64,000 nucleotides of DNA from Saccostrea cucullata (taxonomy: Eukaryota). The stretch lies in assembly GCF_032062105.1 (NCBI RefSeq), contig NW_026941099.1, positions 1-64,000 on the forward strand, written 5' to 3'. A program made the position numbers and the translations under genes. Shown in pieces: positions 20,351 through 61,535 of this stretch (its first letter is position 1; each line of letters starts with the position of its first letter). Below the pieces are notes generated by a model. It was given only the letters and a program-made list of their open reading frames with translations. It was not told the origin of the DNA and did no database searches.

Positions 20351-22345
20351 ATGACAAGATATTTTGCACTTGTTTGTCATCTGGTCTCCATCTGCATTCA
20401 AAGAGATGGCCACGGAGTGAACAGTTGTCAATTTGGGTAAGACTTTTATTTTCATTTTTTCAAATTGATTTAAATTTTCAAAAAAAAGTTTTATAAAAAG
20501 GCAGATTTTTAAACTTCGATTTTTTTAGGAGCAGACAGGATGGATCAGTTTATTGCTGTCATAATTATTTTAGAGATGGAAATGTCTGTAGAGGTTGTAT
20601 AGTATACATGATTATTTATTAAATTAATCTAAATTATTTTGTGTGAGAAATGATAAAAGTTATATGCAAAGTATACTGACACGCAAGAGAAACGCAACAA
20701 GCAGTAATCTACAAAGGTTTGAATTTTTTATCTAATGATTTTCAAAAAAGAATACAGTAAGGCTAAACTCACTTTTCAGAACATCAGGGATTTGATAAAG
20801 ATGTTAAATGATTATCTTTTAACTTTACTAAGTAACATATGACTGTTAAAACACCCCCTCCCAGCCATTCAATTACAACGTGCAAGACTATCCTAAACAG
20901 CAATTGCAGCTTAATTTTTACGATACAATAGGTTAATCAATATCGATATCTGAGGATAAGGAATTATTCTTTGCCATTTTTAAATGCCTGTTTTTGAGAT
21001 GATTAGGTCGAATTTTCTCTAACTTGGCGCATTGTAGTAACCCTTGGACTTCCGGTCCAAGGACTATCATTTATGCATATGATACATGAGACCCCTTTAA
21101 GGCATAATGCAGTGTATTTTTGCATCATCAACTCTCCATATCACCTTTACGTTGAGATTTTCCAGTTACTGCAATGGAAATGCTTACTTAAGCCATTTTC
21201 GAGAAGCCTTAGCATCGTAACGGGAAACAAAAGGAGATTTTATTTTTTGAAATATTGCTGTTTTACTAAAGATGAACAGTATAAACCCTTAAAACTCCCA
21301 TAATATTGCCAAATGTTTTGTTAAGCATGCAATTTTTGATTTCTGTTGAGCAGACTCAAACTTGACTTCCGGTTATGGTACGAAAATCGTTTAACCGTTA
21401 AATTATCGATATTTACCAAATTGAAGATATCCATAATTTTAAGATACAAAATTCTTTACTTTACATAATTATTTCCCTCAAAGTAGGGTGTTACGTTTCT
21501 TTTGCATGTCAGTATATATAATGTACAATGTATAAGATTTAAAGAGGTTCTTAAATGAAGACGTAGTTTACTTTTCAGAATGTCCACCTGGATACTTCGG
21601 ATTTAATTGTTCTCAAATTTGTCCTGAACTTTCTTATGGACACTTGTGTCGTCTGAAATGCAGTAACTGTACAAACTGTAATCACATATACGGCTGTACG
21701 CAATCAACAGGTAATCCTGTCAAATATTTGACATTTTCATTGAAAATTTATTGACATCACCTAATTACGTGAATTATCAATAAGTTTATTGAGAAATGTT
21801 TAAGTACTTATGCTGTTCATTTTAGTGAATATTGTTTCATATCATTAGAATATATTAAATTAGATGTCTCGAGAAAAAGAAGTTCTAGCACTAGACCTGC
21901 AAATGCTATCATGTCGTCCATGCCATCAATCGACATATCAGATGTACTTGAAAAAGAAAATTCCAGTGTAATATCTTTAAATGGTAATAAGACTCCTCCT
22001 GAATTTCATCTTAGAATAATTATCTATACAACCGGATCACTTATATCTTTTGTACTTATACTGATAATTGTTAGAGAAATAAGTAACTCTTCCAAAATAT
22101 TGTTTCCTCCCACAAATACAAACAAGCCACACAACAGTGGTGTCGTAGAAAACATATATTCAGAGGTTTCTGACGTCATTGATTGCGTCATTCCACATGA
22201 AGAAATTGCCTCATCTCTGTTAAACGTGTATTGTAATGATCAGGATGGAGTTTCCGAAAACTCAGAGGGTGGCTGTAAAGACTGTATTTATAGCACTGTG
22301 TTTAGAGAAAAGAAAGAGACTGCCAAACCAATATTATCTTTATAA
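20351..22345 (+). CDS. EGF/MEGF10-like single-pass receptor, copy 1 (tail truncated by a premature stop)
   Basis: Exons 20351-20436, 20574-20593, 21579-21710, 21849-22345 splice in frame: MTRYFALVCHLVSICIQ.., DGNVCR, ECPPGYFGFNCSQICPELSYGHLCRLKCSNCTNCNHIYGC, stalk, TM, NIYSEV, CIYSTV. CAA>TAA stop at 22343; decayed tail homology continues to ~22628. Confidence 0.75.
20674..21514. mobile_element. Tc1/mariner-type MITE in intron 2 of copy 1
   Basis: TIR TACTGACACGCAAGAGAAACGCAACA / TGTTACGTTTCTTTTGCATGTCAGTA with TA flanks. The empty site CAAAGTATATAATGTAC is present in copy 9 (~51421). Confidence 0.8.
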
Positions 22346-23879
22346 ACATCTAGGTTTCAGGCCGACAATACCGTAGACCTTTGTACTAATAAGGAGAAAA
22401 TAACATTTATAAATAATTGCCTTGACCAACAAAGTGAAGTTTATTTTCATCAAATCTCCACAAAGGAAACTAACAAGGAAATCTTTTCTCCTGAGTCTGT
22501 GCAGAGCTCCACAGAGTTTAACAAAAGGGAACTAGAGATAGCTGTGAGCGACTCCAGTCAGGATGCTTGTCCAACATTTGTCCAATTTGTATTGGTAAAT
22601 AAAACAACGGAAACATAATCTCTTTAATGACATATTTCCTTTAGATATTGACATTTCATTTAAAGTCTTTCTCTTTTTGTGAAATATATATGTTGTTTTT
22701 TCACCTATTTTATTATCATTTGAGTGTTGTAGAATGAACATTTCTCTCTAAATTGAAACCAGATATATTCGAAAATTCAAACAAAAAGCCAAAATTATTT
22801 ACATTTAAAGCTCTTTTTTCTCAATACATTTATCAAAGATCATTAAAATTCCTAAAAGTAAAACGAAAAATTCGCCGAGAGATCGATAGTCCTTATTTTG
22901 TCATACGACTGAAATGCGGTCTTCACCCTAATTTTTGATTAAAGGGTCAACTTGTTAAAAATGATTAATCAACACACAATAAAATATAACATGTAATTTG
23001 AAGGGAAAAAGTTTAGGTTTCGTGATTTTTTCTCAAAGCATGAGGTTTTACATAGGAATTTAATTTGTGCACATTTTTTTTTATAAATATTTTTTTTTAA
23101 TTCAAAGATAAAGATTTATATCTGTGTTTTTTAACTTAATATGTTTTTTTGTTATGAATTTTGGAAACAAACAGAGCTGATATGTTGCCTAGGATTGCGT
23201 GTAAGGTTTTTTTTCAAAGGTACGTAACAAATACGAGACGCATGTATGTGGGAGAAGTTCGCAGTCAAACTGCATGTGTTGTCTGTGGGCTTGATATAAA
23301 TCTTGGTAGATCAGTTTCTACTGGGATACATTTAAGTATTCCATAAAATATTCAATATTAAAAAAGGTCTTTTTTACACAAAAGTCCTTTAGACAAAAAA
23401 AAAAATTCATGGAACATGCACGTTTTTATTATGTAGAAATATTTTTGAAATTATAAGTTATGATTTTGATTTAGAACAAAAATAATTATGATATTAAAAA
23501 GCAAATTTAAAACTACGAGTTGTGGGGATTCTTTTTTGTTAACAAGAATGAATTAAATCCCACATGCCATTTTTATTATAAATACATTATCTACCCTCAA
23601 AAATTAACCCAAATTTTACGTATTTCATGGAGCTTGTCAGTCATCTTAGTATATTTCTATTGCAAAATGAATAGTATATGTTTTGTTTGCTTACTGTTGT
23701 CATGTTTTCTTATTTATTGATGTTCAAAGTATTCATAGAATCAATCTCCTTTGTGTTCTTAATAATAACTTGGCGCTGATTAAATATAAATGGATAAATA
23801 AAATGATACATGTAACAAGATCTTCAGAAACATTTCATAATTTCCTTAAAAATATTTTTTCTTGATAAATTCTAACAAG

Positions 23880-24138
23880 TCGTTTGATTGTTGTTAAAAT
23901 TCCCTCTCGAGATTTCCACTCATGATATAGAGACGCCACCACTCATATTTCCCGATTGAGAGCTGCAAACTTTAATCTCGACTCGGCACTAACGGCCATT
24001 GAGCATTAAGGCATTTTTTTCGTGCACGAACTTACTGCAACGAACGGTCTCCACGCCCCACAGTCAAACGCGAACACTCAACTCCTTACGTCGCAGCTCT
24101 AGAGCAGACAATCTAACAAAATGCACCATATGGGCGAC
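23880..24138 (-). mobile_element. tRNA-SINE (ancestral copy upstream of a receptor promoter)
   Basis: Reverse complement of the 11080 SINE family; same position in five array units. Confidence 0.75.
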
Positions 24139-24211
24139 GACAAGTTGTAAAAGGAAGTGAATCATAAATTTATATGAAACTTTAATCCTTTATGTGCAGG
24201 AAATTTTACTA

Positions 24212-59589: not shown

Positions 59590-59613
59590 TAATTATCGAT
59601 ATTTTCTCTTGCA

Positions 59614-59873
59614 GGTCGTTTATTGTCAAGATTCTGACTCATGATATTGAGACACTACCACTTGTATTTCCCGATTATGAGTTGCAAACCTTGTCCTTTA
59701 CATTGCACTTACGGCCATTGAGCGGTATCTGTAAGGGATCTTTTTTGTGCCAGCACTTACTGCGACGACCGTTCTTCACTTTCCATATTCGGATTTGAAC
59801 CCGCGAATTAAAGATCAACTTTGTACTCTGCAAGTCTAGAGCGACAATCTAACCAATGCTCCACGTTGGCGAC
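59614..59873 (-). mobile_element. tRNA-SINE (ancestral copy upstream of the copy 12 promoter, more diverged)
   Basis: Same position relative to ACAAGTTGTAAAAGGAAGT as the other four. Confidence 0.7.
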
Positions 59874-60014
59874 TACAAGTTGTAAAAGGAAGTAAATTAT
59901 TAATATACATTAAACTTTAATCCTTCATGTGCAGGAAATTTAACTATAAAAAGCTAATTGACATGCAAACTTAGCTATAGCATTGGAATTAAATGCATTT
60001 TTTTTAAATCAAGA

Positions 60015-61535
60015 ATGACAAGATATTTTGCACTGGTTTTTCATATAATCAACATTTGCACACAACGAAATGGCGTAAAAAGTTGTCGAAATACGTAAGT
60101 TTTTTGCATTAATTATTCAATTTATTCTAAATTTAAAATATTTTTTTCATATAAGGAGTAGTTCGAAGAGTATAAACTGGTATAATTTTAGGCTCGAGAA
60201 AAATGGATCAGAAGCGTGCTGTTTTAACTTTTACAGGGATGGGGATATCTGCAAAGGTTGTATGCAATGCTTGATTCACCTGATAAATTATTAAATCTGA
60301 ATTCATTTGCATAATATGCAACGTAACTAACGCTTTTATTGTGAAAATTGAAAAAACACTTCACACAATGTATGAGAAAACTTACTTAATTACTAGTCAA
60401 AATAAAGAAGCAATCTAATTTTCAGACTGTCCACCCGGATACTTCGGATCTAATTGCTCTCTTATTTGTCCTGAACCATATTATGGACACTTTTGTGGTC
60501 TAAAATGCAGAAACTGTACAATTTGTCATCACATATACGGCTGTACACAATCTACAGGTAATCTTGTGTTATATTTTACTTTCTCCATCAAAATTTTATT
60601 TTTATTAACAAAATTAGGATAAGATTAACACAATAACAATGTTTAGTACTTAAGTTGGTCATTTTAATTCAATATAATTTGTCTTTTTAGAGCAAATTAA
60701 ATCAGACGTCCTAAGAAAAGGAAGTTCTACTATTAGACCTGTAACTGCTATCAAGCCGTTCTTGCCTTCAAATAACACATCAGAAGTAATTGAAAGTTCC
60801 AGCATGGTATCTCTGTATGGTAACAAGACTCCTCCCAAGTCTAACCTTGCAATAATTATCTATACAACAGGATCACTAATATCTTTTCTTATTCTACTGA
60901 TAATTGTGAGAGAAATACTTAACTTTTACAAGTTATCAGTTTCTCCAACAAATGAAAAGAAGCCACACAACAGTGATGTCGAAGACAACATATATTCAGA
61001 AGTTTCTGACGTTATTGATTGCGTAATTTCACGTAGAGATATTACTTCCTCTATGTTCAACGTAAATAGTAATGAACAGGATGGCGTTTCCGAAATCTTA
61101 GAAGGTGACAGTAAAGACTGTACTTATAGCACTGTATTTAGAGAGAAAGAAGAGACTGGCGAACCGAAATTATCTTTACAAACATCTGGGTTAGAGGCGA
61201 GAAATTCCTTAGACTTATGTGCTAATAAGGAAAACATAACGTTTATAAATGATTGCCCTGACCAACATAATGAAATTAATTTGCATCAAATCTCCACAAA
61301 GGAAAGCAATGAAGAAATCATTTCTCCAGAGTCTTTGCAGAGCTCTACAGAATTTAAGGGAAGAAAAATAGAGATATCTATGAGCGACTCCAGTCAGGAT
61401 ACTAGACTGAGTCCAACATTTGTCCAATTAGTATTGGTAAATGAAACCACGGAGACAACACCTCGCAGCACTGTTAAGGCCTACTATGAGAAATCAACGG
61501 AAAATAGACGAGCAAAAAAAGGGGGACCTTTTTAA
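60015..61535 (+). CDS. EGF/MEGF10-like single-pass receptor, copy 12, open frame (358 aa) with a transposon-derived C-terminus
   Basis: Exons 60015-60094, 60237-60256, 60426-60557, 60691-61535 in frame: DCPPGYFGSNCSLICPEPYYGHFCGLKCRNCTICHHIYGC, TM, NIYSEV, CTYSTV. The last 23 aa are read from the inserted element. Confidence 0.85.

What the first reader, a model, noticed from the sequence alone, without database searches (positions are those of the whole stretch)
20351..61535. Tandem array of 12 small EGF-like tyrosine-motif receptors undergoing birth-and-death: candidate immune or allorecognition cluster
Seen: each unit encodes signal peptide, 10-Cys mini-ectodomain (MEGF10/CED-1/SCARF-type CPPGYFG.NC...C....YG..C...C..C..C.H..GC), Ser/Thr- and N-sequon-rich stalk, one TM, and a ~185-aa acidic tail. 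There are 3 full-length, 3 tail-truncated and 6 pseudogenised copies in 42 kb, a divergent relative at 13.7 kb, and another unit starting at the right edge. Knowledge: clustered, rapidly turning-over single-pass receptors underlie Hydractinia Alr, Botryllus fester and Biomphalaria resistance clusters, and vertebrate KIR/Siglec-type loci. Inference: an uncharacterised lineage-specific receptor family of that kind. The ORF track hides the ectodomain entirely.
Basis: partly seen in the sequence, partly recalled or inferred. Interest (0 to 1): 0.85.

Follow-up and report, generated by a model that had tools for sequence, protein, structure and literature searches.

The report
Oyster mini EGF-receptor gene array
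A rock-oyster genome carries a long tandem row of small, uncharacterised one-EGF membrane-receptor genes, a few kept intact by selection among many dead copies, but nothing yet shows that they act in immunity or self-recognition.

Summary
Window 20351-61535 carries 12 same-strand units of one 4-exon gene: signal peptide, small CC..C exon, 8-Cys EGF-like exon, and a stalk+TM+acidic-tail exon. Three units are full-length (U7, U10, U11). Two are tail-truncated with open ectodomain exons (U1, U9). Seven are pseudogenes or fragments.

The window is Saccostrea cucullata contig C23236. The array runs on to about 101 kb (about 19 units). A second, paralogous cluster lies on C23224, and there are copies on C6733 and C19531.

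RefSeq already models four loci here as "uncharacterized protein"; two of those models are fusions. A tail profile run against 1.84 billion proteins finds only Saccostrea and four clustered Ostrea edulis genes. These share the exon plan, two Yxx[V/I] motifs and a C-terminal T-x-L/F end.

Copies differ by dS 0.3-0.4 with dN/dS about 0.5 everywhere (0.16 at the C-terminus). This indicates purifying selection, with no sign of diversifying selection. There is no ITIM, ITAM or NPxY motif.

The EGF type resembles MEGF10/PEAR1/Tie2/SCARF only below significance thresholds.

Verdict: a real, selected, oyster-restricted minimal EGF receptor family evolving by birth-and-death and gene conversion. The immune/allorecognition reading remains speculation.

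The parts
20351..22627 (+). U1: E1 20351-20436, E2 20529-20593, E3 21579-21710, E4 21849-22345. A TAA stop after 164 E4 codons truncates the tail after both Tyr motifs; homology continues to 22627.
   Evidence: It is the 5' part of RefSeq LOC134257198 (P0003).
24540..26665 (+). Retroelement ORFs (reverse transcriptase) inserted between U1 and U2.
   Evidence: ORFs; RVT_1 E=3.5e-14; composition shift at 24-28 kb.
27598..28886 (+). U2 pseudogene: no E1, stops in E2 and E3, lost E3 donor (AT), E4 frameshifted.
30178..31200 (+). U3 pseudogene: Cys codons lost, stops in E2 and E3, E4 with deletions.
32168..33623 (+). U4 pseudogene: E2 has a 2-nt deletion (63 nt), E4 frameshift after 123 codons. E1 and E3 are open.
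35717..37228 (+). U5 pseudogene: E2 acceptor lost plus a 4-nt insertion, E3 has a stop and a 1-nt deletion, E4 frameshifted.
39872..40947 (+). U6 fragment: E1 39872-39951 and a piece of E4 around 40708-40947. No E2 or E3.
41589..43049 (+). U7, intact: E1 41589-41668, E2 41758-41822, E3 41998-42129, E4 42268-43049. It has both Tyr motifs and the canonical C-terminus. It is not in the protein databases searched.
45854..47533 (+). U8 pseudogene and mosaic: E2 has a 24-nt deletion and a stop, E3 has a stop, E4 has a stop. Its 5' end is 91-98% identical to U10 and its 3' end 87-95% identical to U11.
51119..52500 (+). U9, truncated: E1-E3 are open but the second EGF Cys is Phe. E4 is frameshifted after 125 codons.
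54055..55554 (+). U10, intact reference copy: E1 54055-54131, E2 54216-54280, E3 54456-54587, E4 54743-55554. The first Tyr motif has Phe.
   Evidence: It is identical to residues 1-360 of RefSeq XP_062595824.1 (P0004).
56467..57000 (+). U10b: degraded fragment of E4 only.
60015..61535 (+). U11, open throughout: E1 60015-60094, E2 60192-60256, E3 60426-60557, E4 60691-61535. The family stop codon is lost, so the C-terminal motif is replaced by an extension.
   Evidence: It is the second half of P0004.
13724..14110 (+). Orphan TM/tail exon of a sister family of CC+EGF membrane proteins. No ectodomain exon was detected upstream.
63788..63939 (+). Upstream region of the next unit (U12 = LOC134257196). 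Its coding exons start 238 bp beyond the window.

Best explanation
This is a tandem array of a small type I membrane-protein gene restricted, as far as can be seen, to Saccostrea and Ostrea oysters.

Each intact copy encodes:
- a signal peptide;
- a compact 12-Cys ectodomain: a CC..C lead-in plus one 8-Cys EGF-like module of the MEGF10/PEAR1/Tie2/SCARF style;
- a glycosylated Ser/Thr stalk of variable length;
- one uncharged TM helix;
- an acidic, probably disordered tail of about 175 aa. The tail carries two conserved Yxx[V/I] sites about 45 residues apart and a strongly conserved C-terminus ending T-x-L/F, which has the form of a class I PDZ ligand.

Most likely mechanism (inferred): the proteins are cell-surface recognition or adhesion receptors, a minimal offshoot of the very large bivalve MEGF-like repertoire. 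The small ectodomain binds an unknown ligand. The tail is read through its tyrosine sites (by SH2-type adaptors after phosphorylation, or by AP-2) and is anchored through its C-terminus to a PDZ scaffold.

Evolution (shown): the array grows and decays by unequal duplication, gene conversion between units, retroelement insertion and pseudogenisation. A minority of copies is held open by purifying selection. Copies differ in which tail motifs they retain.
For: Architecture and splice plan. The plan is confirmed independently by RefSeq models P0001, P0002 and P0004 and by the same 4-exon plan in Ostrea edulis.

Selection:
- dN/dS is about 0.5 in all regions and 0.16 over the last 14 codons.
- At the observed terminal-branch lengths of 0.085-0.12, a neutral 361-codon frame stays free of stops in about 0.05% of simulations at 10% divergence (3% at 5%). 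Three open copies are therefore not chance.

Conservation between Saccostrea and Ostrea: all 12 Cys, the TM core, both Tyr sites and the C-terminal motif.

Distribution: only 7 hits in 1.84e9 proteins, all from S. cucullata or O. edulis. The four O. edulis genes lie within 0.37 Mb on one chromosome on the same strand, with extra unannotated copies nearby.

Array dynamics:
- about 19 units on the contig, plus a collinear paralogous cluster at 84-92% identity with unrelated flanks;
- U8 is a mosaic of U10-like and U11-like segments;
- an RT element lies next to U2, which lacks E1.

EGF type: Tie2 and SCARF1 are the best solved-structure sequence matches. The nearest named Atlas clusters are MEGF10, Draper and PEAR1-like.
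Against: - The Logan contigs of the Ostrea homologue are collinear with genomic DNA and say nothing about transcription.
- No Pfam domain reaches threshold.
- The AlphaFold models are poor (pLDDT 36 and 57) and Foldseek finds nothing significant.
- The tyrosine sites match no curated signalling consensus, and one of the three open copies lacks the first Tyr.
- The PDZ-ligand reading rests on sequence form only.
- dN/dS of 0.5 is weak constraint.
- Most copies are dead.
Confidence: 0.6

Rival explanations
1. One reading: a polymorphic innate-immune or allorecognition receptor cluster. Full-length, motif-variant and tail-truncated copies would act as activating, inhibitory or decoy forms, with copy number varying between haplotypes.
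For: Tandem birth-and-death array with many pseudogenes. Copies differ in tail motif content: U10 lacks Tyr 1, U11 lacks the C-terminal motif, and U1, U12 and U13 are truncated. Stalk length varies. The nearest named relatives are engulfment receptors. The family is lineage-restricted.
Against: No diversifying selection: dN/dS is 0.47-0.64 in the ectodomain, the same as in the tail. There is no ITIM, ITSM or ITAM and no charged TM residue. Paralogues are old (dS 0.3-0.4; closest pair 94% identical), so turnover is not rapid. No allelic contig exists in the assembly with which to judge presence/absence. No expression or infection data. No paper mentions these loci.
Confidence: 0.15
2. A housekeeping endocytic, scavenger or adhesion protein. 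The Yxx[V/I] sites would be AP-2 sorting signals rather than phosphorylation sites. The array would be ordinary bivalve gene-family inflation with no recognition diversity.
For: Both Tyr sites have the YxxPhi form. SCARF1 and Tie2-type EGF modules are the nearest solved relatives. Purifying selection is uniform and moderate. More than 1700 first-look candidates for this exon type occur across the genome.
Against: A single small EGF module is unlike known scavenger receptors. The strongest constraint is on the extreme C-terminus, not on the Tyr sites; the second Tyr region has dN/dS about 1.1 on only 16 codons.
Confidence: 0.15
3. A decaying array with no present function. The open copies would be leftovers and the RefSeq models artefacts.
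For: 9 of 12 window units are broken or truncated. Two RefSeq models are fusions that splice around defects. Expression was not shown.
Against: Neutral simulation gives about 0.05% (10% divergence) to 3% (5% divergence) chance of an open frame per copy, yet U7, U10, U11 and W1 on C6733 are open. The C-terminus has dN/dS 0.16. Motifs are conserved with Ostrea.
Confidence: 0.07
4. Membrane-anchored precursors of a shed EGF-like ligand, as with Spitz/TGF-alpha-type or Delta-like proteins, which also have short ectodomains and PDZ-binding C-termini.
For: One EGF-like module, a stalk, a TM and a PDZ-ligand-like end. There is a faint DSL match, E=0.076 over 15 residues.
Against: The 8-Cys spacing is not the 6-Cys EGFR-ligand pattern. 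The DSL hit is far below threshold. No protease site or receptor partner is known.
Confidence: 0.03

Closest known systems
Ostrea edulis LOC130048199, LOC125653700, LOC125657058, LOC125649598 (uncharacterised)
   Same: Same 4-exon plan, 12 Cys, TM core, two Tyr sites and a C-terminus ending T-x-L/F. They are clustered on one chromosome on the same strand, with extra partial copies.
   Different: Only 25-31% identical. Introns are much longer (genes of 4-23 kb) and the copies are spread over 0.37 Mb rather than packed every 3-6 kb.
MEGF10 / Draper / CED-1 / PEAR1 engulfment receptors
   Same: Type I membrane proteins whose EGF modules have the C-x2-G-x-aromatic-G-x2-C style. The tail function depends on tyrosines. 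They are the nearest named Atlas clusters, score 0.78-0.84.
   Different: Here there is no EMI domain, one module instead of 15-17, no NPxY and no ITAM-like pair. The Pfam EGF_PEAR1L match is sub-threshold in 1 of 9 members.
SCARF1/2 (SREC) and the Tie2 EGF repeats
   Same: Best sequence matches among solved structures lie over the 8-Cys module.
   Different: E=0.05 (Tie2) and 2.4 (SCARF1), so not significant. Those proteins carry several repeats plus other domains or a kinase.
Sister families of CC+EGF+TM genes in the same genome (for example C4838, C10158, C15085, and the orphan exon at window 13.7 kb)
   Same: Same CC..C exon and 8-Cys exon (45-60% identical), with a TM/tail exon about 1.5 kb downstream. 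They are also tandemly arranged.
   Different: The tails are unrelated apart from the TM and a membrane-proximal Tyr site.
Vertebrate KIR/Siglec-type paired receptor clusters; Hydractinia Alr, Botryllus fester
   Same: Tandem single-pass receptor genes with pseudogenes and tail variants.
   Different: The ectodomain is not Ig-like. There is no ITIM/ITAM logic, no charged TM residue and no diversifying selection between copies. Allelic polymorphism is unknown.

Membership tests
MEGF10/Draper/CED-1/PEAR1 | N-terminal EMI domain | tested here: not met
   No EMI (PF07546) hit at E<=10 in P0001 or in 9 family members. Only about 10 residues lie between the first Cys and the CC pair.
MEGF10/Draper/CED-1/PEAR1 | Long run of EGF_PEAR1L / laminin-type EGF repeats | tested here: not met
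   There is one 8-Cys module per protein. EGF_PEAR1L appears in 1 of 9 members at E=0.007, below threshold.
MEGF10/Draper/CED-1/PEAR1 | NPxY and YxxL/ITAM-like motifs in the tail | tested here: not met
   Tail tyrosines are listed and aligned. The sites are Yxx[V/I] with N, C, D or Y at -2, spaced about 45 residues apart. There is no NPxY.
SCARF (SREC) scavenger receptors | Several EGF-like repeats, with significant similarity to SCARF1 | tested here: not met
   SCARF1 8hn0 E=2.4; Foldseek E=3.8 on a low-confidence model.
ITIM/ITAM paired immune receptors | [ILVS]xYxx[ILV] ITIM, TxYxx[VI] ITSM, or a YxxL-x6-12-YxxL ITAM in the tail | tested here: not met
   Motif inspection of U1, U7, U10, U11, P0001, P0002, P0005 and P0006.
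ITIM/ITAM paired immune receptors | Activating forms with a charged TM residue that pairs with an adaptor | tested here: not met
   The TM cores contain no D, E, K or R.
Allorecognition / diversified immune receptor loci | Diversifying selection on the ectodomain | tested here: not met
   Nei-Gojobori dN/dS is 0.47-0.54 for the EGF exon and 0.64 for its non-Cys codons. This is a pairwise test between paralogues only; site models were not run.
Allorecognition / diversified immune receptor loci | High allelic polymorphism or presence/absence between haplotypes | not testable with these tools
   No allelic contig is in the assembly. C23224 is 84-92% identical with unrelated flanks.
Birth-and-death multigene family | Tandem paralogues of mixed age with interspersed pseudogenes, and differing copy sets in related species | tested here: met
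   Gene conversion also occurs.
Class I PDZ ligand | C-terminal [S/T]-x-hydrophobic-COOH, conserved | tested here: met
   U7, U10, W1, O. edulis P0005 and P0006, and several pseudogenes end T-[S/P/Y]-[L/F]. dN/dS is 0.16 over the last 14 codons. Binding itself was not tested.

The most novel reading that the evidence does not exclude
The array would be a previously unrecognised oyster recognition system. One conserved mini-ectodomain would be coupled to tails with different signalling content: both Tyr sites plus PDZ end, Tyr-1-less, PDZ-less, or truncated. Gene content would be polymorphic between individuals, acting in haemocyte self/non-self or pathogen recognition.
Probability: 0.12. Interest if true: 0.7.

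Novelty: new member of a known kind. Interest (0 to 1): 0.38.

Why it matters
Bivalves lack adaptive immunity and owe much of their biology to hugely expanded, poorly annotated receptor families. This locus gives a clean, compact example with three useful properties:
- a defined minimal architecture (12-Cys ectodomain, two tyrosine sites, PDZ-type end) conserved between two oyster genera, which gives testable handles for function;
- a documented mix of duplication, gene conversion and decay;
- concrete corrections to RefSeq models that fuse neighbouring genes.

If the copies prove to be haemocyte-expressed and polymorphic, the family would become a candidate recognition system. If not, it is one more lineage-specific MEGF-like expansion.

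Tried and rejected
- Pfam gave nothing for the tail, for the EGF exon alone (DSL E=0.076) or for P0001.
- AlphaFold2 of U10 (pLDDT 36) and of the ectodomain alone (pLDDT 57) were too poor. Foldseek against PDB gave only generic Cys-rich domains at E>0.3, and I draw nothing from it.
- The Atlas search of the tail alone gave no usable hit.
- Literature searches for the LOC identifiers and for small EGF/ITIM receptors in bivalves found nothing specific.
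- C23224 as an alternative haplotype was rejected: 84-92% identity and no similarity in 40 kb of flank.
- Logan contigs of the Ostrea homologue as transcript evidence were rejected: they are collinear with genomic DNA including the intron.
- An EGF exon upstream of the 13.7-kb ORF was not found.
- Rfam and tandem-repeat scans of the window found nothing relevant.
I redid it from stored loci.
- Joined spliced models were not sent to any search. Searches used single exons by reference, or RefSeq's own proteins. A joined U10 coding sequence was used only inside a local stop-codon simulation.

Full report
**What is there.** The window is AT-rich (about 31% GC) and is positions 1-64000 of contig C23236 (129,871 bp) of a 1.17-Gb assembly. 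RefSeq protein LOC134257196 of Saccostrea cucullata matches the contig just beyond the window at 100%, so the organism is that oyster or something nearly identical.

tblastn with the 300-aa ORF at 54652-55554 finds nine long and two short copies on the + strand (E 1e-37 to 1e-105). The Cys-rich exon is found ten times. Reading the reference copy and aligning every copy exon by exon gives a 4-exon gene:
- E1: signal peptide, ending in phase 2.
- E2: 65 nt, encoding a CC..C segment, ending in phase 1.
- E3: 132 nt, an 8-Cys EGF-like module beginning CPPGYFG.
- E4: Ser/Thr- and N-sequon-rich stalk, one TM, and an acidic tail of about 175 aa.

Splice sites are canonical. The exception is a conserved weak GTTGTA donor after E2. 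RefSeq models P0001, P0002 and P0004 use exactly these junctions, as does the Ostrea edulis homologue.

I did not send any joined model to a search. Searches used exons by reference or RefSeq's own proteins.

**State of the 12 units.**
- U7 (41589-43049) and U10 (54055-55554) are intact.
- U11 (60015-61535) is open, but the family stop is lost and the conserved end is replaced by an extension.
- U1 has open E1-E3 and a TAA after 164 E4 codons.
- U9 has open E1-E3 with one Cys lost, and a frameshift after 125 E4 codons.
- U2, U3, U4, U5 and U8 carry stops, frameshifts or lost splice sites.
- U6 and U10b are fragments.
- A reverse-transcriptase element (RVT_1 E=3.5e-14) lies between U1 and U2, and U2 lacks E1.

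The ectodomain has 12 conserved Cys rather than 10.

**Beyond the window.** The array continues to about 101.5 kb of the contig, with about 19 units in all. More divergent EGF exons lie at 106 and 112 kb. Further copies lie on C23224 (at least 6 units, running to the contig end), C6733 (one apparently intact gene) and C19531.

C23224 is collinear in unit order with the right half of the array, but it is only 84-92% identical and its 40 kb of flank is unrelated. It is therefore a paralogous cluster, not the other haplotype.

The tail exon occurs only at these loci. The EGF exon type has more than 1700 first-look candidates genome-wide. Sister families share the CC..C and EGF exons but have other tails. 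The ORF at 13724-14110 is a lone tail exon of one such family.

**Relatives elsewhere.** Word-based searches found only S. cucullata proteins. A HMMER profile of the stalk-TM-tail exon was run against 1.84e9 representative proteins and gave seven hits. These were three S. cucullata models and sequences from Ostrea edulis.

The four annotated O. edulis genes lie at 47.76-48.13 Mb of one chromosome on the same strand. They have the same exon plan, and unannotated partial copies lie nearby. No Crassostrea hit appeared. All members are named 'uncharacterized protein', and no paper in the library mentions them.

The Saccostrea-Ostrea alignment conserves:
- the 12 Cys;
- the TM core;
- a first site [I/V]-Y-[S/T]-E-[I/V];
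- a second site [I/V]-Y-S-T-V;
- a C-terminal block ending T-[S/P/Y]-[L/F].

**Selection and dynamics.** Pairwise Nei-Gojobori estimates give dS 0.25-0.43 and dN/dS about 0.5 in the EGF exon, stalk, TM and tail. Broken and open copies give alike values. Non-Cys EGF codons give 0.64, and the last 14 codons give 0.16.

Terminal branches of the open copies are 0.085-0.12 substitutions per site. In a substitution-only neutral simulation, a 361-codon frame stays open in about 3% of trials at 5% divergence and 0.05% at 10%. The open copies are therefore maintained by selection.

The closest pair of units is 94% identical, and most pairs are 75-89% identical. Turnover is therefore slow rather than explosive.

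U8 is a mosaic. It is 91-98% identical to U10 around the promoter and E1, and 87-95% identical to U11 near the 3' end. This shows gene conversion or unequal exchange.

**What kind of protein.** Pfam gives nothing at threshold. One of nine members touches EGF_PEAR1L at E=0.007. The best solved-structure sequence matches are the Tie2 EGF repeats (E=0.05) and SCARF1 (E=2.4).

The protein-language-model Atlas places the protein next to unnamed mollusc clusters of 245-332 aa (score 0.90). Next come MEGF10-like, PEAR1-like and Draper clusters (0.78-0.84). The tail alone has no relative. Structure prediction was too uncertain to use.

Membership fails on EMI, repeat number and tail motifs. The tyrosine sites fit no ITIM, ITSM, ITAM or NPxY consensus, and the TM is uncharged.

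**Interpretation.**
- Shown: a real, selected, oyster-restricted family of minimal one-EGF type I membrane proteins, arranged in tandem and evolving by duplication, conversion and decay.
- Inferred: surface receptors whose tail is read through two Yxx[V/I] sites and a PDZ-type C-terminus.
- Not shown: any immune or allorecognition role. The between-paralogue selection pattern argues against strong diversification.

Other notes of this scan list several further 'minimal EGF receptor' loci in the same genome. I treat these as context only. My own searches confirm that such sister families exist.

**Verdict.** It is a new member of a known kind, namely bivalve MEGF-like receptor expansions. Interest is moderate.

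Noticed in passing
window 54055-61535 and 20351-28543: Two RefSeq models look wrong. LOC134257199 (XP_062595824.1, 726 aa) fuses the neighbouring genes U10 and U11. LOC134257198 (402 aa) starts in U1, skips U1's premature stop with an extra intron and ends in the E4 of pseudogene U2.
   Followed up: yes
window 45854-47533: U8 is a recombinant. Its promoter-proximal region and E1 are 91-98% identical to U10. Its distal tail region is 87-95% identical to U11. The rest is about 75-85% identical to either.
   Followed up: yes
window 24540-26665: A non-LTR-type retroelement remnant with reverse-transcriptase ORFs lies on the + strand, in an A-rich, higher-GC stretch. It sits just upstream of U2, which has no signal-peptide exon.
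   Followed up: partly
window 2389-3768: A 296-aa ORF with two B-box zinc fingers (PF00643, E=5.6e-14) is followed 30 bp later by a 151-aa ORF with no Pfam hit. This is probably one of the expanded bivalve B-box gene types. It is unrelated to the array.
   Followed up: partly
window 54830-54930 (U10 stalk), also U5, U8 and U12: One subgroup of units carries an extra 12-17 codons in the stalk that repeat the neighbouring Ser-rich, N-sequon segment. Stalk length therefore varies by internal duplication.
   Followed up: partly
G000:C23236:106375-106497 and 112473-112850; L013 (C6733:13313-15574): More divergent CC+EGF exons (about 43% identical) lie just beyond the array and on C6733. This suggests that a second related family adjoins it.
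   Followed up: no
L020, L021, L022 (O. edulis OX387710.1, 47.76-48.13 Mb): Unannotated extra exon sets and partial copies of the family lie between the four annotated O. edulis genes. The flat oyster locus therefore also holds more copies than its annotation shows.
   Followed up: partly
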